DNA of 63,059 nt, the filler included, from Octopus bimaculoides (Eukaryota): the NCBI RefSeq assembly GCF_001194135.2. It is 5 parts of 5 records of this genome, joined end to end, with 100 filler letters (N's around TTAATTAATTAA, not from the genome) between each part and the next. Parts side by side here need not be neighbours in the genome. Positions count along the whole stretch, not along the records: positions 53,647 to 63,059 come from NC_068983.1; 4 more parts are not named here. The stretch is one strand, 5' to 3'. This document shows positions 376 through 63,059 of the stretch, piece after piece. The notes under the pieces are model-generated. The model was not told the DNA's origin, made no database searches, and saw nothing but the letters and a program-made list of their open reading frames with translations. The translations under genes were made by a program, and so were the position numbers. Position 1 is the first letter of the stretch. Each line of letters begins with the position of its first letter.

Positions 376-3300
376 TATTTATATTTGTATCCCAATTTCA
401 AAATAAAAGAGGAGCTCCTACTTAAATATAGTTTCTGCTGTGGTGATCAACACATATAAGCATTGCTAAAAATAAATTAAAAAATGCAATAAAAAATTGA
501 ACTTTTAGAGTTTGAATTTGTCCAATAAAGTTCAATGTTATGGTTAGGAAGTAATGTGTTGATGCTATTCGCAATGATATGAGCAGTTAATTAAAATAAT
601 ATAATGAGAATTAAACAAGAATTAAGGTGACTAAATGGATGCAGAAGAACCAGAAACACACAAAATCAAACCTATGTGCTAAATAACCCAATGTTATTTT
701 CTTTGTTATTGTTCCTGTTGTTGATGTGTAGATGGCACAGTGGTTGAAAGTTTGGAATTGAAAGTAGATATTTTACTAACTCTAGCTCGTGAGCATATGC
801 TTCTCTGCTTAAATCCCACCAAATTTCACTTTATCTTTTTATCTTTTAGCAGAGTAGATAAAATATATACCAATTCTATACTGGGTAATAAGTGATTTAA
901 ATAATCTTACCCTTTCCTTTACCAAAAAAAAACCAAAAAAGATTAGGCCTGTGACTACTCATAATCATTATTCTTATTGTTGCTGTCGTTTTTGTTATAC
1001 CATTCCCCTCATTACAATTGTTATTGTTCAACTTGGTGATATTATCTTTCATACACATACATAGGCCAACTGGAGTTCACATCCCACTGCTAGCTGCAAG
1101 TGTTATGTTGTGTCCATGGGCAAAACACTTAACTTTACTTGCTTTAGGTTTTATGCTTATTTTTATTAACTTCATTCTACTAATATATATATATATATAT
1201 GTATATATATATGTAAAAATATATATGTATATATATATATAAGATGACTTTGCATATATTCATGATAAATGCTCAATGTAGACAATGTGACCAGTTATAA
1301 TTATATTTTGGATATCGTATCAAGTTGGTCGAAATACATTGTTTTTTTCCAACTTCAAATGAATACTAATTGCTCCTCTCTAGTTTTATTTATCCTCTAT
1401 TTATAGAAGCTGTTATATTACATAAATGTATTCATCTTCATGGTCATCTTAAAATATCTGAAAAGCAAAAATTATCATGTTTAAAATGCTATCGCTTTTT
1501 ACTTCTTCTTCTTCTTCTTCTTCTTTTATGCTTATCATACCACAATTTATTTTAATACACCATTGCTGGTTTTCTCATAATGACGTCAATCCATCTTAGA
1601 GTCAATGTGGAACTGAGAATTCAGGTTGGACCAAAATCTAATTTAGGGTTTATTCCCTTCCATCTATTCTTGCCAACCGGTAGTCATTTATAGTTTCTTT
1701 GGAGATTCTTCAATGAATGATTTACCATTGTATTGTCATCCGGTGCCATGATCTGTCACTACCCATACTTGTCACATCATTTATTCATCTTGGGATTTAG
1801 TTGCTTAGTTGATTTTAATTTTCAGATAAATTCTGTATTTTTCTCTTGTTTGTCCCAGTTTAACAACTTCACTAGGTAGTATATATATGTGTGTATATAT
1901 ATAGTAAGAACTGACTCATTCAATGAAGACCATCCAACCCAATGCCAGAATTGAAAGTAGATGAAAAATGGTGATGATATATGTGTGTAAGGCATTACAT
2001 ATGTTCTTTGTATTACATATGAGACAGAACTGTTGTTGAATTAATTCATTATATTTAACATTGCAACCTAATTTAGTAAATCCTATTTATTTATGTATTA
2101 GTGACCATGCAACTGTTTGTTTGTACTGTTTAGTCTCCAAATTTATCTTTTTGCATCATATTTGTTTCATGACCTTATCCTGGGTAATGGCCTGATGGCC
2201 AAACAACAGAATGGATTAGTGTGATGTGTTGAACATCCACACTCTATCCTTTACTGTTCAAAACCCAGTAGCCATAGCACTAATCCACACTCAGATGCAC
2301 AGAGAATCCTTAAGAATTGAGAAAACAAAGGATTCCAGAAGTAAATGCAGAGTTGTGAGTCAGAGACTCTTATCATTGAGCCAAATGTTTGCTGTTCTTT
2401 CACAATTATCAGTGCCAGAAGATATGCCAAAACTAAAATGTCTACTATACATTCCGCTAGTATTAACAAGGAATTCAATTTCTTTATTACTGTTTTTAGG
2501 AAAATGTAAAGAAATAAAAGATTTGAGTGATTAAGTACATATCTCCCTCAATCTTCAACATATATTTACCTTTGGTGTCTGTAAATTAGTGATATACAGC
2601 ACTACACTTTGGAAAATATGTCTGCTTCCATATCTACATTAAAAAAAAAAGAAAGAAAAGTGAAAGAAAAAAAAAGAAAACTCTTCAATTTCGAGTCCCA
2701 TGTCTTCATAGATTTTGTAAATGAAATCTATATTCTTTCGAATTAATTGCCAACTAAATGATTACAGATTTTTTTTTTCTCAAAAAGCTATCATGTATTT
2801 TCTGAATCTATTGATACAATTTTCTCAGGTGTTTCAATAACATCATTCAAATATATCTCTTCAATTAAGTTTTTCATTTACAATTTGATATATATATTTT
2901 TCTGGGAAAAAATTCAGGGAACCATTTCTCATTTCTTTAACATTTCTGCTCACTATGAAATGTTTGTTTTTCTATGGTTTTGACTTTGGTTTACATTATT
3001 TCAATTGGTGTATCCATTATGGTCTGTTTTCTTTTGAACATCATGCATTTTACTGAACTGTTGTTGTATATCTTGGATCCGGCCAAATTATTTTGTTTCA
3101 GTTAGTGTGAATTATGCAAAGTTTTGTTATTTCATTACAATGTTCCCCCCATCCCAAGAACTATTCCATTTAGACTTCAATAACCATCTTTTTTGCAAAA
3201 GCTACTTTGATTGTGGTTATTATCATAATTCTTGTTGACAAAATATGCAAGTTTCTTTTTTTCTATATATAATTTTAGTTTTTAGTGTTTGGCTCTTTAT

Positions 3301-5913
3301 TTTGAATAGTGTACTTGGAAGATTGAGGAAGTACATTGTTACTTGGAAATCTCTTCAAAATCAGTCAAACAACCTTAATAACTAAGTTACTTGGAAACAG
3401 TCAATGACCAACAAAATCTGATCAATTTTGTTGTAATTTCTTTCTTTTTTTTATGTTTTTTTTTAAGTAGATGTTAATTATACACATAATTGAGAAACAT
3501 AAGATTATATAACATCAAGATATTCAAGCCATGAAACTGCATATGAGATTTTTTCCGACTACTACAAAATTGAATTACACAGATTGATAAATAAATTAAC
3601 TCTAGTTGTACTATGATACTAATGAAATACAACATTGTGTTTTTCCTTTTAGAATACAAACAATAATTCTAAAACCAATGAGCATAAATGAAAAAAAAGC
3701 AAAGTGCAAAAATTATCACTTTTACCTCCAAAAATAATACCAGCAGAAAAATAGAAGACAAATTGTTAAAATATAACGGTGATAGTTTATATAAACAATT
3801 TTACAATGATATACATTTTTTTTTTCTATTATTATTTTTGAGTACTACATAAACCAGTGCCAAAACATCAAATTAAACTTTGTTCATACTTTCAACATGG
3901 CAAAGAAAATTAAGGACTGATAACTCTTTACTACTGGAGAACAAGCAATTGGAAATATGAAATATTAAACACAATGAAAAGCAAAAACTAAAGAAACCAC
4001 TCACCAATATATCATGAAAATTCAAACAATATCAATATTTGTTCCTAAGATGAGAAACTAAAAAAATTTAGCTATTCTGTTAAATGTTAATATATTTGGG
4101 AATTTATAGTGAAATTGGTATCATTTTACTAAATTATAAATTATATACATGCACTGCACATTCACACAAATATGTATATGTGTAAATATTTATATATACA
4201 CTTATATATCTATGTGAATGAACACACACATATTACTTAGTTAATGAAGTTAATTTTGAGCACACAATGTTGAAACTTACTATAAAAGTAAGTATATATA
4301 ATATCAAGGGAATCTATATTTAGAGTGCTGAATTGGAAAACTTTTCTTTTTCTAACAAATTCCAAAAAAGGAAGCAAAGCTCAATAAGTTTCTTCCAATT
4401 ATAAGGTAGATATGAATCAAACCAGAGAGTAAAGTATTTTCTTTTTTTATGCTATTTTATTGTTCCACGGAACATTTACAAAAAGCGGTGGTTTATGTGG
4501 ACTAAAATAAAAACATAAAATATAAGTCGTTGTTGTTTGTCCTAAGTTAATAGTTGCATAGAAGAATTTACTGTCAGAAAATAACAGATTACTTCACACC
4601 TAATTAATTCCAATTTGATGTGACAACTTTGTTAATTTAAATAATGTTCTAATTTTACAGAAAATCCTTGAAACTTATAACATTTGCTCAATAGATTAAA
4701 ATTCTAATTTTTAAATGTTGATATATTATTTTAATATATAATATATTTTTCTTCACTAACTACTAATTAACTTAAGCCCCCAGTCTAAGACATATGTATA
4801 GAAGTGTGTTTATGTGAGTGTATATATGCACATACATGCAAATACACAAACATACATACATAAATGTGTACGATAGATAGATAGATAGATAGATAAATAG
4901 GTTCTGCTTGTACATTTAGAAGAAAGATTTATATGAGGAATTGTAATCAATTTTCACTGATCTCAGCGAGCTTCTGAGGGACATGAATGTAACTTTTTCC
5001 TTCTAACCAAATCAATTTAAAAAAAAAAGAAATGTCAACGTTAACTACATTTGTGTCCATTTTCTTGACATTGGAGCAAACTACATCCGTTATTGGCTCC
5101 CACATATAATTAAACTTCTATAACACTGTCATCATCAATATAACAGATTTTTGTTTTTACACTTTATGTCGTTTTCCCCCCAACCTCTTCAAACTAGAAT
5201 GCTGTTTTTTTTTTTCTTCTGCAATAAAGTTTTGAAATATGAAAAAAAAATAAAATAAATCTTCTATCTATTTTTACCTTGTTTGGAAAGGAATGTTTAA
5301 ATCAAAGATTCAAGAGAATGTAGTGTCTGTGATGAAACATTTTAAGGGTTTATAGCGATTTTCTTGTAAGCTTTTATTGATATACACAGAAATCAAATTT
5401 TTGTACCGCCAGCAAGTTTGAAGTAGCTACGTTATGTTACGAAAGACAACTTTTGCTATAAAGTATTTGGTAGATCAATGAATGCTGTTTTGAAGCATAC
5501 TTCCCTTCCACCTATGTTTTTTTTTTAATGCAGTGTAATACGGGGAATAAATGATGGGAAAATATTAAAAAAATATTGAAAAAAAATCAAACAAAAAACT
5601 TTATATTTGAAAACAATTAAAAATAATAGCGCAATCAAGGAAAGAAATTAGCGAAGACTAAGGGAGGTAACTACAAGCTATGTCAAGGGAGATAACTTCA
5701 ATCTTATTTAATAGCAATTACCTCTAATATTTAACAATTGATAAACTGTTGGAAAAAGAAAACAATTCAATGTTTTTGATCTAGTACATTGAAAATATCA
5801 AATTTAACATTTTTAAAGCCAATTTTCAAAAATATGAATTAACAATGCTAAATATTTAAGGATGATAGTATAAAATTATAAAAAAAAAAAAAAATTAAAA
5901 AATGACATTTTCA

Positions 5914-7899: not shown

Positions 7900-8630
7900 G
7901 GAAAGCTGAAAAGTGAGACAAAGAGTTTATTCACAGCAGCACAGGACTAATTAGATAAAAGCCAAGATACAAAAAAACAAGTAGATTCCCAATGTATGTT
8001 ACGCAAATCAAAAGAGTAAAGCATTACTCATATAGTAAGTGAATGTAGCATGCTGGTACAGAAAGAATACAAGAAAAGACATGACAACCTAGGGAGAGTA
8101 ATCCACAGGAAGTTATGTAGAAAGCTAGGATTTGAACATACTGATAAATGGTATGAACATGAACCTAGTAAAGTACTAGAAAGTAAGAAATACAAGATGT
8201 TATGGGACTTTAACATTCAGACTGACAAAGTAATAGAAGCTAGAAGGCCTGATTTAGTAGTAGTAAATAAAGATAATAGAAAATACCAAATAATTGACTT
8301 TACAGTCCCAAATGATGAAGAAATCAATATGAGAGGTATAGAAAAAATAGCAAAGTACCAGGACCTAGCTATTGAATTACAGAGACTATGGAAAGTACGG
8401 GGAAAATGTATCTCAATAGTTATAGGTGTATTGGGAACTATACCTAAAGATTTGAACAGATGGATAGAGGAAACAGGCATAAAATCTGGTTTAGTACAGC
8501 CCCAGAAAACAGTGTTATTAGGGACAGCCAGGATACTTAGGAGGGTTCTTAGCATCTAACGTTATTTGTTGTAGCCCAATGTTAGGATTGTTTCTTTTCC
8601 AACAGTTTAATCTGTTGTGTGTATATGAAA
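7900..8630 (+). mobile_element. 5'-truncated R4/Dong-clade non-LTR retrotransposon (CCHC knuckle remnant, restriction-like endonuclease, 3' UTR)
   Basis: ORF 8050-8559 has HIVSEC..EYKKRHD, LWDFNIQTDKVIEARRPDLVVV, IIDFTVP, EKIAKYQDL, IVIGVLG and LLGTARILRRVL, the typical R4/Dong C-terminus with a PD..D RLE motif. Flanked on both sides by (AAT)n (7873-7899, 8631-8675). Upstream codons contain stops. Confidence 0.9.
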
Positions 8631-8675
8631 ATAATAATAATAATGATAATAATAATAATAATAATAATAATAATA

Positions 8676-8879
8676 TTTCAAATTTTGGAACAAGGCCAGC
8701 ATTTTAAGGGTAGGAGATAAGATGATTACATGAATTCAACTGGTACTTATTTTATTGACCCTGAAAGGATAAAAGGCATATTCAACCTCCGTGGAATTTG
8801 AACTCAGAACATAAAGACAGCTGAAATGTTACTAAGCATTTTGCCCAGTATGCTAATGATTCAGTCAGTTCACTGCCTT
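8676..8879 (-). mobile_element. SINE family B copy
   Basis: Minus strand: AAGGCAGTGAACTGACTGAATCATTAG head, GAGTTCAAATTCC B box; its tail runs into the (AAT)n at 8631-8675. Confidence 0.85.
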
Positions 8880-8924
8880 AAATAGTAGTAGTATTAGTAG
8901 TAGTAGTAGTAGTAGTAGTAGTAA

Positions 8925-9186
8925 TCAGGAAATGCAATGACTGTAGGGGATTTCTACAAAAGTAATCGCAATGGTTATAAGTACTCTAGGCACTGCCATC
9001 AACAGACTTGGTAGTCTCCTTATTGAGAGTGGTGCAACTATGAGAGCTGCATTAAAACAGAAATCTACTCTCTTGAGAACAGCAAGGATTGTAAGAAAGG
9101 TCCTCAATATCTAAGGAGACTGGTATCAAGGCCATTCATTGATTATGAATATAAAATAGTCACACAAACCATGAATAATAATAAAT
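8925..9186 (+). mobile_element. Second, shorter and divergent R4/Dong 3' fragment
   Basis: 8926-9114 reads QEMQ*L*GISTKVIAMVISTLGT...LKQKSTLLRTARIVRKVLNI*, aligning with ELQRLW..CISIVIGVLG..QKTVLLGTARILRRVLSI of the upstream copy; different 3' UTR ending in (AAT)n at 9176-9186; preceded by (AGT)n. Confidence 0.75.
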
Positions 9187-10019
9187 AAAAGTGCAGGCAT
9201 GACTGCTGAGTTAAGAAGTTTGAAATTCGCTTAAGTCATGCTGTTCTTGGGTCTAATTATATAATGAAGCATTTTTGTCAGGTGTCTCCTACCATAGCTT
9301 TGGGTTGTGTCAGACCTTTTGAGTGAAACTATAAAATCTACAAAATCCATCAAATTGACTGTACATGCACTTGGGAAGTAAACATAATCCATTGCCAGAT
9401 TTAACATTACCACCTGAAACTTAATCCAAATAATTTTACAAATGTCTGGATCTGGTCTTTGGTCTGAATGTAATTCATGAGAAACGATTTTCTTTCCTAC
9501 CTTTCCTCCAACAGTTTCAGAAGCCAGCAAAGTTCATGGCACAGCTCTGCTACCTAAATGTTTAATCCAGCATTGTTTCTGCCTCTCCACTTCTCTCATT
9601 CCTTCTGTCATCATTACTCGCATTTCCAAATTGGTAGACAGACTGATACAAGTTGTTGAGTAATATGATATGTCTAGACACAAGTTATTTTTATGAGATA
9701 CTACCTGAGGTAACCGGTAACACCCTGGAGTGAGGATATTCCCAGTACACATTACAATGCCTAATTTCTCTCAGACGAAAAATGAAATCAAGACATAGGA
9801 TAGATAATAGAAGGCTTAAGCAAATTCATTCACGAAACAATAATACAAATAAATACGTGTGGAATCTGAAAATGACAATCGTTTGGTCAGTTGAGTGGAA
9901 AGCTGCAAATATATAATGAATAGAAACATCAAGATGGGAATTGTAAAAGAGTGCTATGAAAAAAAAGAACAAAAGTTTGAAAAGTAAACAAAAAATTATT
10001 TAGTAAAAAGACAATTTGA

Positions 10020-11330
10020 CGACTGTGTTTCGTGGATATAGTTGCACTGATCGTGAGAACCAAATATCGATTGCATCAGTTAGAAGCAACAATTTTAAGT
10101 GCAGGTGTTAAGAAAATAGATGTTACATGTTTTAGCACACAATGTTGCAACATTTAGAATCGACAATTTTAAGTGCAGGTGTTAAGAAAATACATGTTAC
10201 AGCAATCTGAGGATGCTGAAATAATTGATGAACATTTTAACCCCGCAACAATTTAGGCCAAATTTCGTTAATCAGTTAAAAATCGGTGCTGATTAAAGAT
10301 TATCGAGTTTTTGAAATTGCAAGTACATAAGTGACCTCATGGGCATAAGCCCCACACATGTGTCAAGTTTCATCAAGATCAGTCTGATAGTCGCGGAAGA
10401 GTTAAAGTAACACATTCGCAAACACACACACACCCAATGGTGGATAAGAAATCCTGACTTTCTTAAGTAAGTTGAGGCCCACATGAGAATATACCCTGTC
10501 TTAAAAGACATAAGATCCTGAACCTTCTACAAGAGTTAAGGTTCATGTAGTAACTTAACGCAAATCTGAACTTCAAAAGTATTTGCAAGATGGGGTATAC
10601 TGATAAGTTAAACCTTGCATATATAAGTAGTAGTTTGTAGTCTGATTGTCAGTATATCTATGGTTATGCATGAAATACTGAATAGAAAATGTTTGAGAAA
10701 TAAAATACACTTACCTATTTAAAACCTGAAATGATAGGGAATTAAATCAACGAATTGAAATACTAAGTTTTAGCAAATGAAAACAATTTGTATTGAAATG
10801 CAGAATTAGCAAATGCTAATGAGATTACTGTTAATAAGATGTCTGTTTATGCCCATGAAACATTTTTTGTCAAATTGCAGCAATTTTCGTCAAATTAAAA
10901 TCTATATTAATGAGTAGAACCAATTTGACGAAAAAATGACCAGTCTGGTAGCGAACCTGTGTTGTTGTTATTTTTGTGCATGTGCATAAAAAAAATTATT
11001 TATCTCAAACCCATCCTTAGCACATATTTCATCTGTGTATAAAATTTCAAGAAAATCGGTTGAAGATTTTAAAAGTTATGGCCGAAAATAACATTCATAT
11101 GAGAATTTGCATTGAAATGTCCTATTGATTTTTGAAAAAATCAATGCCGATTAAAAAATATCGATTTAAAAAAATTTTTAAGTGTGTAAGTGACCGCATG
11201 GGCATAAGCCCCACACATGTGTCAAGTTTCATCAAAATCAGTTGGATAGTCTCGAAGGAGTTAAAGTAACAAATTCACAAACACACGCACAGCCACAAAC
11301 AGACAGAAATTGCCATTTGTGTATATAGAT
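10020..11330 (+). mobile_element. Non-autonomous Helitron/Helentron-like (HINE/Lep1-like) element with internally repeated modules; 5' boundary uncertain
   Basis: Module GTGTCAAGTTTCATCAA(G/A)ATCAG..GAGTTAAAGTAACA at about 10326-10432 and 11185-11290, diverged copy at 11020-11090; ends with (CA)/(CAGA) microsatellite plus TTGCCATTTGTGTATATAGAT, resembling Lep1-type 3' ends from memory. Confidence 0.55.
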
Positions 11331-11599
11331 TTGCTGTTGGGACACCTGAGTTATTCTTTAACTTGTCCACATATTGNNNNNNNNNNTTAAGTGTGTAAGT
11401 GACCGCATGGGCATAAGCCCCACACATGTGTCAAGTTTCATCAAAATCAGTTGGATAGTCTCGAAGGAGTTAAAGTAACAAATTCACAAACACACGCACA
11501 GCCACAAACAGACAGAAATTGCCATTTGTGTATATAGATTTGCTGTTGGGACACCTGAGTTATTCTTTAACTTGTCCACATATTGTTTACAGGTGATTG

Positions 11600-12560
11600 C
11601 TAATAGTTAGGAATAGTCAAATGGCTTGTGAGAACCAAAGAAGATATATACAGGGATACAGTCAGCAATGAATTTGTTATGCAGGTAATCATCGTCAAAA
11701 GTCAGTACTTAGTCTTCTGTTTTGTTGTCAGTCCTCCAAGCCATGACAAAGGAATGGGAACTTTTGCATAATTGATGACAATTGTTTGAGCAGAATCTGT
11801 AGAAGATTTTGAGAAGGAAATCCAGAAATGAAAGTAAAAGTTCTAAATCTAAACTTAAATAAGAAAGAAAATAGGACCCTAGTACCATTAGGAAATAGTA
11901 GAGCTTGAAATGCAGAAAAGAAGTACGTAGAGATTTCATATGGTGAACACAAGAGGTATAGTGGAATTACAGGCATGACAACAGAGAAGATAGATTTCAT
12001 ATGTGACAGTACACAGGAGCAATAAGCATTTTCAAACGCCCAGACAGCCCATTTGAAATAGCTGATAGCTTCTGTTACCCAGGTGAAGACATATAACCAG
12101 AGTAATAACAAGCTGGAGAAGTTCAGAGAAATATTACCTCTGCTGGTAAGAAAAAGTTTCTCCCTCAGTGATGAGCAGATTCTATGATTCTTGTATATAA
12201 AGTGTGGCTTTGCATTGTACTTAGACATAGATCTTTCTAGCTTGTGCAAATTGTATTTTACAAAGACTAGAAAAACATGAACCAAGCATCTTACTGCATA
12301 AACGATAGAGTACAAATGAGCTGAATGTAAGAGGTTTCAATAAGTAACATTCAAGAGAGAAGTCTGTGCTGGTATGGGTATGTGATGCATATGGATAATG
12401 ACAGCTGTTTGAGGATGTGTTGATTACTCAAAATGACTGGAACCTATGGAAGAGAAAGACATAGGTGTACCTGAAATGTTGCATTTTATGAAGATGACAA
12501 AGAACTATAATAATTGATGGTATACAGTGATGGAGAAGACTCAGCCAGCCATGCAACCAT
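11600..12560 (+). mobile_element. RTE-clade LINE reverse transcriptase remnant (many stops and frameshifts)
   Basis: Plus-strand fragments GIVKWLVRT, KSVLSLLF (QGSVLSPLLF), VLQAMTKEWELL, EIADSFCYPG (EVVDSFCYLG), KFREILPLLV, IQERSLCWYGYVMHMD (QERRLRWYGHVMRM). The minus ORF 11728-12315 is an antisense shadow. Confidence 0.85.
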
Positions 12561-53602: not shown

Positions 53603-55084
53603 NNNNNNNNNNNNNNNNNNNNNNNNNNNNNNNNNNNNNNNNNNNNATCTATATTTGTAATTGCATTTCTCTAAAACTATCACATTTTTTTTATATCTTA
53701 AGTTATAAATTCATGTACTTCATTTATATCCTTAGTATTTATTTATGTCTCAAACTCTAACCTTCGCTTCCATCAACAACACTATCAACGAACGTCACAC
53801 CAGCTTAATGCCTCTACCGAAACCAGCATCAAGCACCAAACGCCTCAAGTGTTTCAGTTCTCGAGTTGAGCATGCTCGAAATAAAATGTCAATGACTCCT
53901 CCATGAGTATTTAGCTACTAAATTCACTGCTTAATAAAGCACACCGCAAAAATATCAAGTCGAGAGCATGAAAAGAAAGAATGACACAAAAAGAAAATGA
54001 AACATAAGAACAGAGAATGAATATTAAATAAATATGTAAAAAGTTGGTGTAATAAAATATAGTATCAGATGCAAAATCCTCTTCATGATCATACGATATA
54101 ACTCATGGGTGGCATACAGATAATAAATAAATAAATAACAATAATAATAATGATATCTGATATAACCGACAGCAACAAGAGAACATTTTTTTCCAGTGGT
54201 GTGTGTATGGAGTTTATTCAATCAAATCAAGTACTTAACGCGTACTCTTTTATACACCCGAAGAGGTTGAAAGGAAAAAGTCTACCCCAACGGGATTTGA
54301 ACACAAAATATAGAGTAACTTAACTAAACACCTATTTTGTGTGGTGTTCTAGCATTCCTTTTATCCAAATGCATAATGATAGTAAGAAACATGCCAAGGA
54401 GCCTCTACGTGCTCTTTTGATCTGCTAGAAATGGCAGCAAAATTACACTTGGATCACATACTTTAAAAAAGTAAGTACACCTTACAAGATGCTCTAAATA
54501 TACAAAAAAAAAAAATGGTATGCTAACGGCTTAAATTATTTTGAATAAAAAACTGATCAACCAATAATAATGCCAACAACGATAATAATAATACCAACAA
54601 CAACAACAAAATAATTACGAATTACTAAAAAGTCGTCTGATTTGGAGCCAATTGCCGTGCATTGCATTATGGTGGAATAAACAAGGAAGACTCGAACATA
54701 TCGAACCCATTACTTGAATAGCATTTGGTGTCATTGATCTTCTGAGGACGAAAGAGAACGACGCTAGGTACGAGATATTGCCGAGTTTGCTGATAGCTAT
54801 CTTCAAAGAACACAACAATAAAGTCATTAATTAGAAACAATTCTATCAAATTTAATCACGAGGTCAGTAATTTTCAGTGTGAGTCAATAACATCCACTTC
54901 AAATTTTAACCGATACTTTATTTTATCAGCTCCTGGTATGATAAAAGGGAAAGTTGTCTTCGGCCACAATTTAAAGAGATGAAATAAGTATTCGAAGGCA
55001 GTCTGATTGATACTCTACCGGTTCCCTTAATTCGCCACCCTAAAATGCTGTAATTATAATAAATGTAATAATTCTACTTTTTCC

Positions 55085-55290
55085 ATATGGCCTAGAGTTT
55101 TGAGGGGTGGGGTAATTCGATTGCATTGACTGTAGTAATTTAACTGGTACGTTATTTTATCGACCCCGAAAGGATGAAAGACATAGTTGACCACAGTAGG
55201 ATTTGAAATCTGAAGGTAAAGAATCCGTAAAAATGTTGCTAAGCGATTTATTTGACCGAATCGCAAATGATTCTTCTGTTTCGACACCTT
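55085..55290 (-). mobile_element. SINE family B copy (older)
   Basis: ATCGACCCCGAAAGGATGAAAG domain; decayed head. Confidence 0.75.
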
Positions 55291-55303
55291 AACAAATATA
55301 ACA

Positions 55304-55517
55304 ATGGTTTCAAATTTTGTCGCAATGCCCACAAGTTCGAAGGAGAGAGAAAGTTGATCACATCGAGCCCAATGTTCACCTCATACTTATTTTATCAACT
55401 CCTAAAGAAAAGAAGGCAAAATTGTCCTCGGCGAAATTCGAACTCAGCACAAAAAGACGGACGAAATGCAGCTAAGAATTTTGCGTGCTAACGATTCTCC
55501 CAGATCACCACATTCTT
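55304..55517 (-). mobile_element. SINE family B copy (older)
   Basis: TTTCAAATTTTG tail, GAAATTCGAACTCAG B box region. Confidence 0.7.
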
Positions 55518-55569
55518 AATACGTATAATAATTCTTTCTAATATAGACACAACGTCTGAAATAACATTT

Positions 55570-56129
55570 AGCGACCTCGAAAGGATGAAAGGCAAAGTCG
55601 ACCACGTCGTAATTTGAACTCAGAACGTAGCGGCAGACGAAATACCGCTAAGTATTTCCCCCGGCGCGCTAACGTTTCTTATTTCTTTATTGCCCACAAG
55701 GGTCTAAACATAGAAGAGACAAACAAGGACAGACAAAGGGATTAAGTCGATTACATCGACCCTAGTGCGCAACTAGTACTTAATTTATCGATCCCGAAAG
55801 GATGAAAGGCAAAGTCGACTTCGGCGGAATTTGAACTCAGAACGTAAAGACAGACGAAATACTGCTAAGCATTTCGCCAGGCTTGCTAGCGACTCTTATT
55901 TCTTTATTACCCACAAGGGGCTACACACAGAGGGGACAAACAAGGACAGACAAACGGATTAAGTCGATTATATCGACCCCAGTGCGTAACCGGTACTTAT
56001 TTAATCGACCCCGAAAGGATGAAAGGTAAAGTCGACCTCGGCGGAATTTGAACTCAGAACGTAACGGCAGACGAAATACCGCTAAGCATTTCGGCCGGCG
56101 TGCTAACGTTTCTGCCAGCTCGTCACCTT
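55570..56129 (-). mobile_element. Head-to-tail SINE family B trimer with a single head
   Basis: Junctions at 55676/55677 and 55893/55894 join the tail AAAGAAATAAGA to the inside of the next A box. Confidence 0.9.
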
Positions 56130-56148
56130 TGCTGCAACTGATATTAAT

Positions 56149-56343
56149 GATTTCAAATTTTGGTGCAAGTCCAGAAATTTCGGTGGAAGGAAAAAACCAA
56201 TTACATCGACCCCAGTGCTGGTACTTATTTTATCGACCCGAAAGTATGAAAGACAATCTCAACCTCGACGGAATTTGAACTCGGACGAAATACCGCACAG
56301 CATTTTGCCCGGCGCGGTATCGGTTCTGCCAGCTTGTCTCGCT
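56149..56343 (-). mobile_element. SINE family B copy
   Basis: GGAATTTGAACTC B box, TTTCAAATTTTGG tail. Confidence 0.8.
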
Positions 56344-57264
56344 ACTGCTGCTGATGTTAATAACATCAATCATCGTAATCACCATCACCATTATCATAAT
56401 CATGATATCAAATTCATAGGTTTACTTGTATCATGAAAAATCGTCATCAACACAGACACACACATATGCATACACATACATATATTCACACATATACACA
56501 GTACAGAAGCATGCACGCATACCTGTAAAAGAAATACATATACACGACCTGTGAATAAAGCGTGGAGTATTAACTACCGATATGGGATTCGTATATCGAA
56601 TTAAAATCTGTATTTAATATCATATACACATACAACTTACATATGAACCCGCACACAGCCGCATATTCACAAAGTGGCGTGCGTTGTCCTAAATACGTAA
56701 GTATACACACGCAGGCGCCTGCTCACTCGCGTACGCATACTCACACGCATACACACACACACACACGCACCAAAACAACAATAATATAAACAAACTAAAA
56801 CCTAAATCTATGAAATGAGTGTTAGATTACCTGTTCTCGGTCTATCGGGCTGCCACTGTCTGTCTCAGGCTCCTTCCCTTCTTTGATATATACATAAGGC
56901 ATAGAAGAATCATCAAAAATGATGTCCCATATTTTGATTTTTTTTTTAAATAATTTTGTTTTTGTAAACGAATCCGTTCTATTAGGTTCTCCATGATGTA
57001 TTTCTCCATAGGTAGCGATAACGAAGATTAAGGCCGCATATATTGATTTCACACACAGTTCACATACACACTTCTTTCAATTCACACATACACGCATTTA
57101 TATCTGTTTACACACACACACATACGCACACACACGCGGATATGTGTCTACATATATACATATACATACATACTAATATATATTTATATATATATATACT
57201 ATGCATACATATGCATGTATATATGCATACAAGCATGTATGTATATATTTAGAAACACAGCTGC

Positions 57265-57299
<35 letters not shown>

Positions 57300-57328
57300 C
57301 GTGTATGTCTATATTAATTGCATATATG

Positions 57329-57397
<69 letters not shown>

Positions 57398-57497
57398 AGT
57401 TGAATATGTATATATATGCATATGTATATTATATGTGTGTATATAGACATATATAAAGATAAAAATATTCATAAATGTAAATATCTAAAACAAGACA

Positions 57498-58906
57498 TAC
57501 GTCGTTCAAATTCCATATGATTGTTGGTTATCTGTTCCTCGAAAGTGAAACTTTGTCCTGTTCATTTTCATTGTACGCAAATAAAGTGTTTCGAGAAGAA
57601 ACGATGCTCCACCATTGAGTCCTTAATGGTGTTTTTGTGCAGGATGTCTAGCATTCCCTGAAGTGTATAGATTGTTTATGGAGATCATACAGTTGGAAAT
57701 CATTAACTATCATTAACACGATTCGTCAACTAGTGAATGAGTTGACTCAGGAGAACAGAAGAAACACACTTCGTCAGCTGTTGGACCACTTCACTGTAGT
57801 CAATATGTATTTTATAATAAGGCGGCGAGGTAGCAGAATCATTAGCACGCCAGGCAAAATGCTTAGCAGATTTCGTCCAAATTTGAGTTCAAATTCCGCT
57901 GAGGTCAATTTTCTCCTTTATCTTTTCGGGGTCGATGACATAATCATCAGTTGAACATTGGGTTCGATGTAATCGACTTGACCACTCTCTCGGAATTGTT
58001 GGCTCTGTGCCAAAATTTGAAATCAATATGCATTGTAAAATATGGTGTAAGGTTCTGTCTATTGGAATGTGTGTATCGAAGTTGAGCACCTTGTCAGCTG
58101 ACATTTGATTTGAAGGAGGAAAGTAGTGGAATTTGCTCTCGTGTGAGGAGTGTCTTTGAAGTTAATGAGGATATTTCTTTTCTCGACCTAGCCATATTGG
58201 ATGAAATGTGATCTGGATGTTTTATAATCTTAAACGATACCTCAGTCCATGGAATGACGTCACTCTTCTTCTCTAAAGCCTAAGACGTTTCAAAACTAGT
58301 GATCTGTACAGAAAAGAAAGTTGAGTGCTTTAGTGAATAACAAGGGTGTCATTCTCTTTGATTTTCTGGAACGTGTTTGTACCGTCAGCAACAGGACACT
58401 GAAGAACTAAAAAAGCGTAGAGTAGTAATTAGGATGAAGAAACCGAACAAACATTTAAATGCGATTTACATTCGCCATGACAATGCCTGACCAGTCATCT
58501 TTGGCAACAAATCAGGTTCTCTACAAATTGAGCTGATTAGTGCACCCCATCGACCGTACAGTATGAATCTGGCATCATACTTCCGTCTGTTTGGTCCAAT
58601 GAAGAACAATCTTCATACTCAATGATTTGAATACACAGACGAAGCGAAAGTTGTGAAGAAGTGGGTACCACTGAGCCCATGTGAATGCTTTCAAAGAGGA
58701 ATAGAGACTTCAGAGATAGCAGACAAGTATCTCTTGTGATGAAAACTATGTTGAGTATCTTTGTATTGAGAATGGGTTATACAATAACCAGCATGTGCAA
58801 TTTGAAAGGCGTATGTCTGTTTATATGTGCAGTTTTAATAACATATGTCATTTTATAAAAAAAGTTATGCCTGCTTTTGAATCACTTCTTAATGAACTCA
58901 TGCATA
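57498..58906 (+). mobile_element. Mariner element with decayed transposase, interrupted by a SINE at 57819-58028; ends approximate
   Basis: VYGDHTV, ELTQENRRNTLRQL, QLTFDLK..GICS, SME*RH..KPK, KGVILFDFLE, HDNA*P, PHRPYSMNLAS, FRLFGPMK, NYVE in the expected order; weak TIR-like ends near 57498 and 58900. Confidence 0.8.
57819..58028 (+). mobile_element. SINE family B copy inserted in the mariner
   Basis: AAGGCGGCGAGGTAGCAGAATCATTAGC head, GAGTTCAAATTCC B box, GTGCCAAAATTTGAAATC tail. Confidence 0.85.
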
Positions 58907-59041
58907 TAGTTAGATAGACACTGATAATTCAATATGTCCGCTAAACCATACTAATGGTTTTTTTTATCTTTGTGTACACGTTATTTATAAATCGCAACTA
59001 AGTTTTCTATTAATGTTCCCACAATATACGTATGTTATCAG

Positions 59042-59198
59042 CTTCGAATCAGATATCAACCGACAAGGTACCCAACTTCGATGCACACATTCCAATAGAC
59101 ACCATATTTTACAATGAATATTGATTTCAGATTTTGGCACGTGGCCAACAATTCCGAGTTCGAGATCAAGTCTATTACATCGAACCCAATGTTCAGCT
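59042..59198 (-). repeat. Inverted copy of 57949-58115 (SINE tail plus mariner WVP segment)
   Basis: Reverse complement aligns along its length with scattered substitutions and a 10-bp deletion. Confidence 0.9.
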
Positions 59199-59374
59199 AA
59201 TAATATGCGTATATTATCAGCTCGGATAACGGACAGAGTCAGCGACTATTGAAAAGGTTGCAAGACGCAACGAACATTTTTGAAAAATTAATAAGTAAAT
59301 AAGTGGAAACTTTACCTGTGAATGTGTTAAATAATAAGGCACTAAAAGAGAATGACATTCCCCAGACACAACAA

Positions 59375-59407
<33 letters not shown>

Positions 59408-60384
59408 CTACCAACAGCGGTAGGTACAAATTATAGTATACTATAGTATACTATAGAAATTCATAAAGGGTGCAGTGGGCACCAACTGACTGAGGTACGC
59501 CAAACCATAAATAACACATTAGGCAGAGACGACGACAACAACAGGACTTTTCGTTTATTATATTTATTATATGAAAATTTATGAACTTCCTCTAACGAAA
59601 TGCAAAGTTAACTTTTGTCGAACTTAAACACCCCACCTCCAGAATCGGAAGAAATACTGCAAATGATTTCGTCCTACGCTCTACCAAATTTGGTGTTTCA
59701 GCAGCAATAATCCCACCATTGATTCGCATACAATAATTACATTATTCAATAGGCGGTGCTTCAGCATAGCCGTGGTCAATTGATTGAAACAAGTTTCAGA
59801 ATATATCCTAGATTAACAAAAGAAAAAATGAAAAATAACCCCTCCAAAACAAGAAAACTCTATTGAAGAGTAGGAATTTAGCTTCAATTTCTGACTGATC
59901 AAGTGACGTTGTTTTATGTCGATGTCAAAGAAATGAATGTTTGGATTTTAGTGATCATATCACCATAGTAATGTAGCTGAGGCAGATGATAGGTAAATGA
60001 ACGACAGTGTTTATAAGATGCTGGTTGTGAGGATTGTGGTAGTGATGATGTTGCAGATGTTGATGCTGGTAGTGATAGTGGTGGCATTTACGGTGGAGGG
60101 AGGATGATGGTGGCATATACTGGGAAGAGAATTCGCATAACTTTCGTTAACACATGTCCTTATCTTGTAGCTTTGGCGGAGGCGATGGTAGTGCAATGGA
60201 AACATATCTCCCGGGGAATAGAAGTTATCACAAGGTGTTTAACATATGTTGAATATGCGTTTATTAGAACTGCATAGATTATATAAGGGTATAATTCACA
60301 CGTCAGATGTTGGATGGTACGAATTTGATATAATTCAATCCACATACGTCTTTGAAAGCACTGATATGTTTTGATTTATAACTT

Positions 60385-60472
60385 TATATGTGTGTGTGTT
60401 TGTGTGTGTACATCTATACGTACCCACACATACATATATTCATGCATATATATATATATACACACACGCACA

Positions 60473-60505
<33 letters not shown>

Positions 60506-60696
60506 GTATANNNNNNNNNNNNNNNNNNNNNNNNNNNNNNNNNNNNNNNNNNNNNNNNNNNNNNNNNNNNNNNNNNNNNNNNNNNNNNNNNNNNNNNNTA
60601 TTTGAATATATACAAATAGATATCTATCTATCTATCTATATATCTGTCTGTCTGTCTGTTTCTGTCTGTCTGTCTGTTTCTGTCTGTCTGTCTGTT

Positions 60697-60727
<31 letters not shown>

Positions 60728-60741
60728 TTCTATATATATAT
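60385..60741. repeat. (TG)/(TA)/(CA)n, gap, then (CTAT)n and (TGTC)n with a 16-bp higher-order unit
   Basis: Directly visible. Confidence 0.9.
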
Positions 60742-61065
60742 AGGAGCACTCCGTCGATTACGACGACGCGGGTTCCAGCTGATACGATCAACGGAACAGC
60801 TGGCTCGGGAAATTAACGTACAAGTGGCTGAGAACTCCATAGACATGTGTGCTCTTAATGTAGTTTGCTGGGAGATTCAGCGTGACGCAGAGTATGATAA
60901 GACTGGTCCTTTGAAATACAGGTACTACTCATTTTTGCCAGTTGAGTGGACTGGAGCAACGTGAAATAAAGTGTCTTGCTCAAGGACACAGTGCGTTGCC
61001 CAGAATTGAACTCACGACCTTACGATCGCAAGAGGAATCCCCTAACCACTAAGCCACGTGACTTC
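60742..61065 (-). mobile_element. Near full-length SINE family C copy
   Basis: Minus strand: TGGCTTAGTGGTTAG A box, GAGTTCAATTC B box, CCTTGAGCAAGACACTTTATTTCACGTTGCTCCAGTCCACTCAACTGG core, long tail. Confidence 0.85.
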
Positions 61066-61084
61066 ACTCACTCTATATATAAGC

Positions 61085-61130
<46 letters not shown>

Positions 61131-61560
61131 AAGTATATATATACATACATCCACACAACCACATGAGCACAAAGATGCACACAGATATACTTATGTATAT
61201 ATATGAAAGGGGATTTCTTGAAATTAAGGTGATTGTGTAAGTTAGCACTCATAAGAACACTGGCTCACTGAATGTATAGAAGGGAATAATGTTTCCGTTG
61301 GAGGGAGTGTTTCACACGAATCGACAGACTAGCGTACTTTTGTCAGTCACAGAATATTAACTAACTAGTAAAAATAAATAGGACGCATTTATTCTTATTT
61401 TGCGATTTGCTCAATCGGTCTCCATTAGATGACAGGTGGGTCTATTGTAATATAACTTTAAATTGTATAATCTTTCTTTAATACTCATGTTTACATGTTT
61501 TCTACCATGTCAAACGCTTTATCTGTCGGATTTGTGACTAAAACGGGTGCAACCTGAAAA

Positions 61561-62778
61561 GGTCGTCAAGCATGAAATTTGTAGAAAAGAAAAAAGTTGC
61601 AAATGTTTTATAAATAAAAGGAATAGTTTTATTCATCAAAGTATGCACCCATATTGTCAATACACTTTTGCCATTTCAGCGGTAGCTTGTCCAGCCCGGA
61701 ACTGTAAAAGCCTGGCAATCTAGAGTCAATAAAATCTTGGAAGGCCTGTTTTACAGCATCATCGGAATTAATTTTTTTTCCTATTAAAAAGTTATCCAAA
61801 TTCTGGAAGAAGTGGTAATCAGGGAGGCAAGATCAAGTAAATATGGTGGATGATGGAAAACTTCCAACTCCAACTCCTGTAGTTTCGCCAATATCATTTT
61901 TGCGATGTGTAGTCTGGCGTTGTCTTGCAATAAAATAGGAATGGATCTCTTGACTAATCTAGGCTGTTTTTTTTTATTTGTAAGTTTCTGCATCATTTGG
62001 TCCAGTTGGTTCCAGTATACTTCGGCTGTGATTAATGATCCAGGTTTATTAAAATCATAATAGATCACACCTGCACCAGACCACTAAACACACACCACCA
62101 GCTTCTTTTAATGAATTTTGCTTATTGGACTGTGTTGCTGGCTCGTCTTTGTCCAACCATTGTGCTGAACTTTTACGGTTGTTGTATTGGATCCATTTCT
62201 CATCACATGTCACAATTCAATTAAAAAATGATTCATTTTCGTGACGAGAAAGTAGCATAATGCAGGCTTCCAAACGTTGCTGTTTCTGATTTTCATTGAG
62301 TTCATGTGGAGCCCACTTATCCAACTTTTTCACTTTACCGATTTGAACTAGGTGAGTCAATATTGTTTGCTTGCTAACACCGAATAACAACGATAATTCA
62401 CGGGCAATTTGAGATGGATCTGACTCGACGGTGGCTTTCAGTTCGTCATTATCTACCTTTGTTACGGGTTGACCGCGAAATTTTGCAAACCAATTTGATA
62501 TTGTTTGCTGTGTAATAACATCAGACTGAAATACTTCATAAATATTCCGAGCTGTCTGTGATGCTGTATTTCCAAGAAAGAACTCATATTTCAAAGCTGT
62601 ACGAATTTAGACTTATTTATCTCAAGACAAAATTAGCAAAAAACGATTTATAAATACTTTATTAAGCGCAAAATGAGTTAGAATAAAGAAATAGTTGTGA
62701 TAACTTTCTAACAAAAAATAAAGATTGTCAAAATATAATAATGGCGCAAAATGAGTTGCTGTCAAAGTTTATGGGACG
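61561..62778 (-). mobile_element. Near full-length mariner (DD34D-type) element with frameshifted transposase
   Basis: KYEF..GNTASQTARNI, KWAPHEL, VTCDEKWIQYNN, GVIYY, LQDNARLH, HPPYLLDLA, KWQKCIDNMGAYFDE*; imperfect TIRs at 61561-61584 and 62759-62778, the latter cut short. Confidence 0.92.
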
Positions 62779-63059
62779 CCGGCAACGTCAACTCGGCTAC
62801 GGCTATCCCGTCCAGTACGAGAGGAACCGCGGCATCACAGCAACGGTTTGCCGGCTCGCTGGATAGAGCGGTGATGCCAGGCTGCCTCTGAGCGATAACG
62901 GCTGAACGCCTCTAAGCCGGAAACGTAGCCGGACCCGAGTTGTTTTCCAAAAGCGTCTCAACCTCAAGGCGCATGCCTTAGCTCGGCGTTCGCCGTCCGC
63001 CGTCCACCCGTCGCATTCGCGCAGCGAGCGGCAGCGTCGCCGGTAGAATTGCCATTTTG
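62779..63059 (+). rRNA. 28S rRNA: Eukaryotic 28S (LSU) rRNA 3'-region fragment, highly divergent, running off the window end
   Basis: Sarcin-ricin loop AGTACGAGAGGAAC at 62814-62827 and CTGAACGCCTCTAAG at 62902-62916, at the same spacing as in eukaryotic 28S, followed by a GC-rich expansion-like tract. Confidence 0.85.

What the first reader, a model, noticed from the sequence alone, without database searches (positions are those of the whole stretch)
62779..63059. Divergent 28S rRNA 3' fragment with compensatory stem changes, joined to a truncated mariner TIR
Seen: an invariant sarcin-ricin loop and the eukaryote-type CTGAACGCCTCTAAG motif in a sudden GC-rich block. Relative to the vertebrate sequence as I remember it, the flanking stems differ but still pair (CCTGC/GCAGG becomes CCGT/GCGG; GAC..GTC becomes GGC..GCC). 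That implies it came from a functional rRNA and was not randomly decayed. It begins where the mariner TIR stops a few bases short. Established: coleoid rDNA is long-branched, and 28S 3'-end retrocopies (SINE28) exist in mammals. Inference: it is an rDNA orphon, a retroposed 28S 3' end (possibly a SINE28-like family), or a chimeric join with host or parasite rDNA.
Basis: partly seen in the sequence, partly recalled or inferred. Interest (0 to 1): 0.7.

Follow-up and report, generated by a model that had tools for sequence, protein, structure and literature searches.

The report
Stray 28S rRNA fragment beside mariner
The last 283 bases of this octopus-like scaffold are a displaced, non-functional piece of the animal's own large-subunit ribosomal RNA gene, joined to a broken mariner transposon; this is an ordinary kind of genomic debris, although similar stray pieces turn up in related genomes.

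Summary
Window 62790-62941 is a genuine eukaryotic LSU rRNA segment (helices 94-97, Rfam 74 bits, E=1.6e-17). It has an intact sarcin-ricin loop and H97 loop and sits in a block of 62% GC against 34% next door. The rDNA starts by 62777 and runs into expansion segment 39 at the piece's edge.

The mariner claim is wrong: the whole 5' inverted repeat plus 11 nt (38 nt in all) is missing, not a few bases.

The "divergence" is a lineage trait, not decay. A bona fide 28S from marine metagenomes (L123, 2001 bits) shares the odd features and is 86% identical. It differs from the window by four fully compensated helix changes.

Three more isolated fragments of the same 28S region lie in AT-rich nuclear DNA of related genomes. 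One sits inside a complete Tc1-like transposon, with no target duplication and no poly(A).

The window's copy has few private changes, but two of them break helices. This suggests, though it does not prove, a young pseudogene.

Best reading: a dispersed fragment of host rDNA joined by non-homologous repair. An rDNA array edge, an assembly chimera and a SINE28-like retrocopy cannot be excluded, because the 3' end is cut off. Parasite rDNA is very unlikely. Interest is modest.

The parts
61558..62771 (-). Dead Mos1/SETMAR-type mariner copy, 5'-truncated by 38 nt, with the transposase broken into at least 4 ORF pieces
   Evidence: Pfam HTH_48 and Transposase_1 on the ORF pieces. 85% identical over 1249 nt to an Octopus vulgaris copy, L001:11557-12772. 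The end-by-end alignment shows homology stopping at 62771, which is 38 nt inside the L001 element.
61560..61584 (+). The mariner's 3' terminal inverted repeat, the only TIR present in the piece
   Evidence: AGGTCGTCAAGCATGAAATTTGTAG has 1 mismatch to the L001 TIR core. It is the only match in the piece with up to 5 mismatches allowed.
62772..62776 (.). Junction bases TGGGA that cannot be assigned to either the mariner or the rDNA (filler or diverged sequence)
   Evidence: They lie beyond the end of mariner homology and before the exact 21-mer shared with L127. They align poorly to both L127 and L123.
62777..62789 (+). Lineage-specific linker just 5' of helix 94, at the domain V/VI boundary of 28S
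   Evidence: CGCCGGCAACGTCAACTCGGC (62777-62797) is identical in L127, where it follows a ~110-nt GC-rich insert downstream of the conserved ...GGTTAGTTTTATCCTACC.
62790..62941 (+). 28S rRNA helices 94-97 (start of domain VI), a closed structural unit
   Evidence: Rfam RF02543, 74.1 bits, E=1.6e-17, model 3007-3161. 86.3% identical to the functional 28S in L123 over 131 nt. 38/47 consensus pairs form.
62814..62827 (+). Sarcin-ricin loop, unchanged
   Evidence: Exact AGTACGAGAGGAAC.
62902..62916 (+). Helix 97 loop CTGAACGCCTCTAAG, unchanged
   Evidence: Exact match. The flanking stem pairs 8/8.
62942..63059 (+). Proximal part of expansion segment 39 (helix 98 region), cut off by the edge of the piece about 150 nt short of where the 28S 3' end would lie
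   Evidence: 74% identical to L127 over window 62875-63056. Blocks are shared with L123 (AAAGGCGTCTC, GCCTGCCATAGC). The tail GAATTGCCATT matches L127 GAATTGCCATTCC and resembles L123 GGGATTTTGCC, which lies 158 nt before that gene's 3' end.

Best explanation
This is a displaced, non-functional fragment of the host cephalopod's own 28S rRNA gene, that is, an rDNA orphon or pseudogene piece. It covers the start of domain VI: a short linker, helices 94-97 and part of expansion segment 39. It is joined head-on to the 5' side of a dead mariner copy that has lost its first 38 nt. The join has no transposon end, no target-site duplication and 5 unassignable bases. It is therefore best explained by non-homologous repair of a chromosome break that captured a piece of rDNA, or of rRNA-derived cDNA. 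The break lay either inside the mariner, 38 nt from its end, or next to it with a small deletion. The fragment does nothing. It looks well preserved because it is young. It looks divergent only because the 28S of this lineage is itself highly derived. Shown: the identity, extent and structure of the fragment, the truncation of the mariner, the lineage-wide 28S type, and the existence of sister fragments in other genomes. Inferred: the break-repair mechanism, the fragment's youth, and that the fragment ends soon after the edge of the piece.
For: LSU identity and extent. The sequence is host-type, not foreign. The piece shares the mariner and a ~220-nt repeat family with Octopus vulgaris L001. 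The window and the isolated copy L127 share 64 states that differ from L123, plus an exact 21-mer. The divergence is a lineage trait: L123 is a real 28S (2001 bits), recovered in four independent marine assemblies, and it carries the same unusual sequences. No other rDNA lies in the piece, and the far side of the mariner is not 28S, so this is not a simple transposon insertion into a 28S gene. Precedent in related genomes: in L121 a 271-nt fragment of the same region sits inside a complete Tc1-like element with 226-nt TIRs, between ...DWPPQSPD and NIWKTL.... About 9-15 nt of target are lost, and there is no duplication and no poly(A). That locus is on a 98.7-kb long-read contig with both sides resolved. 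L122 and L127 are further isolated copies in AT-rich DNA. Slight decay of the window copy: two private G-to-C changes (62833, 62838) break helix pairs that are intact in both L123 and L127. rDNA pieces are known donors of insertions at breaks repaired by end joining in yeast (PMC11372161). Dispersed rDNA pseudogene fragments are documented in human (PMC5381670).
Against: The 3' side is cut off at 63059, so it is unknown whether the rDNA stops (isolated fragment) or continues into a whole unit. No reads were available, so the join has not been verified independently. Exact-product look-ups for ORFs spanning the join found nothing. The host's functional 28S was not obtained, so 'private changes' could instead be real differences of the host's gene. 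The fragment's universal loops are intact, which also fits a unit kept homogeneous at an array edge. The break-repair mechanism is inferred from one resolved example in another genome.
Confidence: 0.55

Rival explanations
1. The edge of a true rDNA array. On this view, the first or last unit of the array is truncated inside 28S where it meets flanking transposon-rich DNA. The sequence continues beyond 63059 into the rest of 28S, the spacer and full units, and the scaffold stops because the assembler met the repeat.
For: The piece ends inside the rDNA block. The scaffold is short and contains an N gap. The universal loops are intact and the structure is good. Units at the ends of human rDNA arrays are known to be truncated and mildly pseudogenic (PMC5381670), which would also explain the two pair-breaking private changes.
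Against: Isolated fragments with very similar 5' and 3' limits exist in related genomes (L122, L127), so no array is needed to explain it. The window's tail ends just where those copies end. Nothing in the piece shows spacer or further rDNA.
Confidence: 0.2
2. An assembly chimera: reads from the high-copy rDNA were wrongly joined to a mariner-containing contig, so the junction does not exist in the animal.
For: Both partners are repeats, the join is near a scaffold end, and no independent assembly with the same join was found.
Against: No sequence is shared between the mariner and the rDNA at the join that could mislead a graph assembler. Five unassignable bases sit between them. The rDNA part carries private substitutions not expected of array reads. 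Comparable joins are real in a long-read contig of another genome (L121).
Confidence: 0.12
3. A LINE-mediated, 5'-truncated retrocopy of the 28S 3' region, i.e. a cephalopod analogue of mammalian SINE28. It would run to the 28S 3' end and be followed by an A-rich tail and a target-site duplication beyond the piece's edge.
For: The fragment lies within the terminal ~500 nt of the 28S, as SINE28 heads do (PMC4994717). Four copies have staggered 5' ends (-84, -74, about -46 and about -37 nt from the sarcin-ricin loop), as 5' truncation would give. SINE28 copies are also found embedded in other transposons.
Against: None of the three sister copies reaches the 28S 3' end: they stop 281 nt, about 150-170 nt and about 125-150 nt short of it. 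None has an A-rich tail. L121 has a target deletion rather than a duplication. The only candidate duplication is a 6-nt ATGAAT near L122 in AT-rich DNA, which is weak.
Confidence: 0.1
4. Foreign rDNA, from a parasite such as a dicyemid or coccidian or from another contaminant, joined to host DNA.
For: The fragment averages only 59.5% identity to a panel of 75 environmental eukaryotic LSUs, against 80% within the panel. Neither the exact variant nor its antisense ORF is common in public collections.
Against: The same LSU type is embedded in nuclear, repeat-rich DNA at three other loci. The window's flank is octopod-like. No prokaryotic genome carries the motifs, and Rfam scores the eukaryotic model highest.
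Confidence: 0.02

Closest known systems
Dispersed rDNA pseudogene fragments ('rDNA-like signal', orphons) as described for the human genome (Robicheau et al. 2017, PMC5381670)
   Same: A piece of the 45S rDNA unit lies outside a recognisable array. It is flanked, at least on one side, by ordinary repeat-rich DNA, it is slightly to heavily degraded, and it has no function.
   Different: It is in a cephalopod, not a mammal. It is short (at least 283 nt) and, together with three sister copies, confined to one region of the 28S (end of domain V to ES39). The human cases are near-full-length units or scattered short strings.
SINE28, a mammalian SINE with a 28S 3'-end head (Longo et al. 2015, PMC4994717)
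   Same: It derives from the terminal ~500 nt of the LSU, has a similar size range (65-437 bp), is re-derived lineage by lineage from the local 28S, and is sometimes found inside other transposons.
   Different: SINE28 copies reach the LSU 3' end, carry an A-rich tail and 5-28 bp target duplications, and are Pol III transcribed. The sister copies here stop about 125-280 nt before the 28S 3' end and show no tail. One has a target deletion. The window's 3' end cannot be seen.
Capture of rDNA, mitochondrial or retrotransposon-cDNA fragments at double-strand breaks repaired by end joining (yeast Break-Ins assays, PMC11372161)
   Same: The donor is rDNA. The insert measures hundreds of nt. There is no target duplication, a small loss at the target, and a few unassignable bases at the junction.
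   Different: That is an experimental system in yeast. Here the mechanism is only inferred from junction anatomy in animal germline DNA.
Transposons that insert into 28S genes (R1/R2/RT-type LINEs; Pokey; Tc1/mariner in 5S spacers, reviewed in PMC10946416)
   Same: A transposon and 28S sequence lie directly next to each other.
   Different: Those cases have rDNA on both sides of an element with intact ends. Here there is no rDNA on the other side, and the element's end is missing.

Membership tests
Eukaryotic LSU rRNA (Rfam RF02543) | Covariance-model score above the curated gathering score | tested here: met
   74.1 bits against a gathering score of 50, E=1.6e-17. The eukaryotic model outscores the archaeal and bacterial ones.
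Eukaryotic LSU rRNA (Rfam RF02543) | A complete gene: the whole model is covered and sits within a transcription unit | tested here: not met
   Only model positions 3007-3161 of 3401 plus part of ES39 are present. Upstream is a mariner, and there are no other LSU hallmarks in the piece.
Dispersed rDNA pseudogene fragment / orphon | rDNA-derived sequence flanked by non-rDNA | tested here: inconclusive
   The 5' flank is a mariner and AT-rich DNA. The 3' flank lies beyond the edge of the piece. Sister copies L121, L122 and L127 have non-rDNA on both sides.
Dispersed rDNA pseudogene fragment / orphon | Departs from the functional gene in ways that selection would not allow | tested here: inconclusive
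   Two private G-to-C changes break pairs that are kept in L123 and L127. The host's own functional 28S was not available for comparison.
SINE28-like retrocopy | Head derived from the terminal ~500 nt of the LSU and reaching its 3' end | tested here: inconclusive
   The window copy starts about 505 nt before the 3' end on the L123 scale but is cut off about 150 nt short of it. The sister copies do not reach the 3' end.
SINE28-like retrocopy | A-rich or simple-repeat tail and a 5-28 bp target-site duplication | not testable with these tools
   The 3' end of the window copy is outside the piece. In L121 both are absent and 9-15 nt of target are deleted. L122 and L127 show no A-rich tail.
SINE28-like retrocopy | Pol III transcription | not testable with these tools
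   This needs expression data.
Transposon insertion into a 28S gene (R2/Pokey-like situation) | 28S sequence on both sides of an element with complete ends and a target duplication | tested here: not met
   No rDNA lies left of the mariner, and the 5' TIR and TA are absent at the junction.
Break-repair capture (end-joining filler insertion) | No target duplication, small target loss, and few or no bases of homology or untemplated bases at the junctions | tested here: inconclusive
   The window's visible junction has 5 unassignable bases and a 38-nt loss of the mariner. The second junction cannot be seen. All features are met in L121.

The most novel reading that the evidence does not exclude
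Coleoid cephalopods may carry a recurrent family of roughly 270-450-nt fragments from one specific part of the 28S, running from the end of domain V through helices 94-97 into ES39. Their ends cluster: 5' ends fall 37-84 nt upstream of the sarcin-ricin loop, and two independent 3' ends coincide within about 20-45 nt in ES39. This clustering could arise if the source is a discrete molecule. That molecule could be a SINE28-like mobile RNA. Alternatively it could be a naturally separate small rRNA, if the 28S of these animals is split at the lineage-specific insert between helices 93 and 94 and in ES39, as domain VI is in kinetoplastids.
Probability: 0.12. Interest if true: 0.55.

Novelty: new member of a known kind. 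Interest (0 to 1): 0.3.

Why it matters
Taken alone it matters little. It is one more piece of rDNA-derived junk, and it warns annotators that such a block is not a functional rRNA gene and is not contamination.

Two side results are more useful. First, the 28S domain VI of this lineage is strongly derived in a region that is normally among the most conserved in the ribosome. It averages about 60% identity to other eukaryotes, the sister lineage's functional gene carries a changed H97 loop, and there is an extra GC-rich insert between helices 93 and 94. This can mislead rRNA filters and contamination screens. Second, stray copies of the same short 28S region occur in at least three genomes, twice next to or inside Tc1/mariner elements. 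If a genome-wide census confirmed clustered ends, that would point to a defined source molecule or a preferred repair substrate.

Tried and rejected
1. The Rfam gathering scan and the 9.4-kb E-value scan returned only microsatellite-driven miRNA noise and missed the LSU hit. Only short-stretch scans found it (against 4, 30).
2. Prokaryotic origin, which I suspected from the GATAA...GGAAAC features (from memory), was rejected. Two scans of 185,579 bacterial and archaeal genomes found nothing, and the eukaryotic model scores best.
3. A specific metagenome pattern found nothing. The relaxed pattern GATAANNGCTGAACGCCTCTAAG found more than 117 eukaryotic LSU contigs, but none was closer than about 73%. 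They served only as a comparison panel.
4. A word-indexed protein search with the 84-codon antisense ORF found nothing. The exhaustive HMMER search with the same ORF found the relatives.
5. Exact-product look-ups of five window ORFs, including two spanning the junction, found nothing on record. The join therefore could not be confirmed independently, and the sequence beyond 63059 could not be fetched.
6. The idea that the mariner inserted into a 28S gene, or into a longer L127-like fragment, was rejected. No LSU sequence lies left of the mariner.
7. My pair count for L122 was out of register and was discarded. The 'soft' local alignments over-extend and were ignored.
8. Whole-fragment folding is not more stable than shuffles (z=-1.07), so it is uninformative for a GC-rich piece.
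9. Naming the organisms behind L121-L127 failed. The accessions are not in the searchable literature, and published cephalopod-specific primers target 18S or COI, which L123 lacks.
10. A viral-contig scan found nothing, and there are no tRNA genes in the piece.

Full report
WHAT IS THERE. The piece (53647-63059) is AT-rich, repeat-laden DNA with one 88-N scaffold gap at 60511-60598. At its right end the composition jumps from 34% to 62% GC. A short-stretch Rfam scan places window 62790-62941 (+) on the eukaryotic LSU model at positions 3007-3161 of 3401, with 74.1 bits and E=1.6e-17. This is the closed unit formed by helices 94-97 at the start of domain VI. The archaeal and bacterial LSU models score lower. 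The sarcin-ricin loop (62814-62827) and the H97 loop CTGAACGCCTCTAAG (62902-62916) are exact and unique in the piece. The larger scans missed the hit because of their speed filters.

THE MARINER AND THE JUNCTION. Minus-strand ORF pieces between 61629 and 62594 carry Pfam HTH_48 and Transposase_1. The best protein relative is an Octopus vulgaris protein at 74% identity. Its locus, L001, holds a copy that aligns at 85% over 1249 nt to window 62771-61560. That copy has both ends: TA|TTAGGTCGTCAAGTATGAAATTTGTAG... and the matching inverted repeat followed by TA. The window keeps the 3' TIR (61560-61584), and this is the only TIR in the piece. On the rDNA side, homology stops at 62771, which is 38 nt inside the element. 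The whole 5' TIR plus 11 nt is therefore absent, not 'a few bases'. Between the last mariner base (62771) and the first certain rDNA base (62777) lie five unassignable bases, TGGGA. No 28S sequence lies on the other side of the mariner or anywhere else in the piece. This is not a transposon sitting in a 28S gene.

WHOSE rRNA IS IT? Against 75 environmental eukaryotic LSUs, retrieved with a relaxed motif, the fragment averages 59.5% identity, whereas the panel averages 80% internally. It differs at only 7 of 61 panel-invariant columns, and a few genuine rRNAs in the panel are equally divergent. Prokaryotic genomes lack its motifs. The key came from using the 84-codon antisense open frame across the fragment as a handle. 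The word-indexed search found nothing. The exhaustive HMMER search found antisense ORFs ending ...PRFLSYWTG, like the window's, and these led to DNA.

L123 and three identical contigs from other marine assemblies, including Tara Oceans, carry a bona fide 28S (2001 bits, model 1061-3401). This gene has the window's 'odd' sequences (GCTATCCCGTCCAGTACGAGAGGAACCGCGG, GCAACGGTT, GCGATAACGGCTGAA) and is 86.3% identical to the window over 131 nt. The divergence is therefore the normal state of a lineage, not decay of this copy.

The window piece shares the mariner and a ~220-nt repeat family with O. vulgaris, so its context is octopod-like. L127, a Logan contig, holds a decayed copy. It shares an exact 21-mer (window 62777-62797) and 64 states with the window that differ from L123. 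The window's rDNA type is thus at home in nuclear DNA of its own lineage, and parasite rDNA is very unlikely. That L123, L121 and L122 come from another coleoid branch is my inference and was not shown. L121 and L122 share many repeats with each other but none with the window or L001.

FUNCTIONAL ANCESTRY AND STATE OF THE COPY. In the Rfam consensus register the window forms 38 of 47 pairs, L123 forms 44 of 47, and L121 forms 42 of 47. Between the window and L123, 32 pairs are identical, 4 have changed on both sides and still pair (three of these in H94), 3 have changed on one side and still pair, and 7 are broken in the window. Five of the seven are in H96. There the model's posterior was low, and the window folds into one long hairpin in a shifted register with similar stability (-21.4 against -23.3 kcal/mol).

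A three-way comparison of the window, L127 and L123 finds only about 5 private window changes in the 152-nt core. Two of them (62833 and 62838, both G to C) break pairs that are intact in both other sequences. This suggests a young copy that has started to drift. The caveat is that the host's functional 28S was not available.

SISTER COPIES AND MECHANISM. L121 lies on a 98.7-kb long-read contig at 35% GC. It has a 271-nt fragment of the same region (92.6 bits; 94% identical to L123) inserted into a complete Tc1-like element of about 1.84 kb with 226-nt TIRs. The insert lies between ...DWPPQSPD and NIWKTL... of the transposase, on the same strand. About 9-15 nt of target are lost, and there is no duplication and no poly(A). 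L122, from the same assembly, and L127 are further isolated, more decayed copies in AT-rich DNA.

On the L123 scale, with the start of the sarcin-ricin loop as 0 and the 28S 3' end at +468, the 5' ends lie at -84 (L127), -74 (L121), about -46 (L122) and about -37 (window). The 3' ends lie at +187 (L121), about +300-320 (L122) and about +320-345 (L127). The window is cut at about +315. None reaches the 28S 3' end.

SINE28 is defined by a head reaching the LSU 3' terminus, an A-rich tail, 5-28 bp duplications and Pol III transcription (PMC4994717). The sister copies do not meet these features, and the window cannot be tested. The anatomy fits capture of rDNA, or of rRNA-derived cDNA, at a chromosome break repaired by end joining. 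That process uses rDNA as a frequent donor in yeast (PMC11372161). Dispersed rDNA pseudogene pieces are known from human (PMC5381670; review PMC10946416).

If the window's fragment was inserted into the mariner as in L121, the missing 38 nt of the mariner should lie just beyond the rDNA, outside the piece. This is a clear prediction.

WHAT REMAINS OPEN. The 3' side is cut off and no reads were available. An rDNA array edge remains possible; such edge units are truncated and mildly pseudogenic in human. An assembly chimera and a tailed retrocopy also remain possible. I rate them 0.20, 0.12 and 0.10, against 0.55 for an isolated captured fragment.

The clustering of ends in four copies is suggestive. 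However, n is 4 and all copies were found through one keyhole, an antisense ORF over helices 95-97. No other part of the 28S appears in the ~70 kb of host-like DNA held, but that is a small sample.

VERDICT. This is a real, correctly recognised 28S fragment. Its divergence is explained by the lineage, and the mariner detail was mis-read. Its nature is ordinary: an rDNA-derived pseudogene fragment, a new member of a known kind. There is a modestly interesting hint of a recurrent fragment family in cephalopod genomes.

Noticed in passing
window 55360-56334 and 57811-57979: Several copies, partly in tandem, of a ~220-nt interspersed repeat that also occurs at least three times in the Octopus vulgaris locus L001 (3956-4144, 7376-7611, 8840-8981) at 70-85% identity. 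This region also explains the GC rise to about 0.45 around 55600-56350.
   Followed up: partly
window 60511-60598: An 88-N scaffold gap. The mariner/rDNA junction lies in the contig to its right (60599-63059) and is not interrupted by N.
   Followed up: yes
window 56450-57460, 60380-60510, 61053-61206: CA/TA/GT microsatellites give dozens of sub-threshold Rfam 'miRNA' hits (mir-297, mir-466, mir-3149 and others). These are low-complexity artefacts, not genes. A (GTCT)n tract lies at about 60640-60720.
   Followed up: partly
window 60740-61070: A 330-nt block of higher GC (0.42-0.46) lies between two microsatellites. It has no match to any locus held and no tRNA by ARAGORN. It may be a SINE-like repeat, but this is unverified.
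   Followed up: partly
L123 about 4140-4126 (minus strand); also L124-L126: The functional 28S of the sister lineage has CTGAAAGCCTCTAAG in the H97 loop, with A where eukaryotes almost universally have C. The window keeps the usual C.
   Followed up: partly
L127, sense positions about 339-446: A ~110-nt GC-rich insert lies between the conserved ...TTTTATCCTACC (helix 93 region) and helix 94. It is absent from L123, and its last ~13 nt are shared exactly with window 62777-62789. It could be a lineage-specific expansion segment at the domain V/VI boundary or an insertion private to that pseudogene.
   Followed up: partly
L121 about 9760-11600 (minus strand): A complete Tc1-like DNA transposon with unusually long (226-nt) terminal inverted repeats at 93% identity. 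Its transposase ORF is otherwise open, apart from the inserted 28S fragment.
   Followed up: yes
L121 10001-10405 (protein P0030): The public gene call over the antisense strand of the 28S fragment reads TGA as tryptophan, so the locus 'does not translate to the query' under the standard code. This is a gene-calling artefact on eukaryotic DNA in a metagenome assembly.
   Followed up: partly
L122 about 8000-12500: The flanks of the L122 fragment contain repeated ORF motifs (...ECPGYDTKQSDVEVPVMLE...). They look like an uncharacterised interspersed repeat of that genome and have no Pfam annotation on record.
   Followed up: no
L002 (JGI 3300007080) and L003 (Logan SRR30574432): Mariner copies 75% identical to the window's element and 93% identical to each other occur in an environmental metagenome and in an unrelated sequencing run. 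Close protein relatives are annotated in ants and spiders. This is consistent with the wide, patchy distribution typical of mariners.
   Followed up: no
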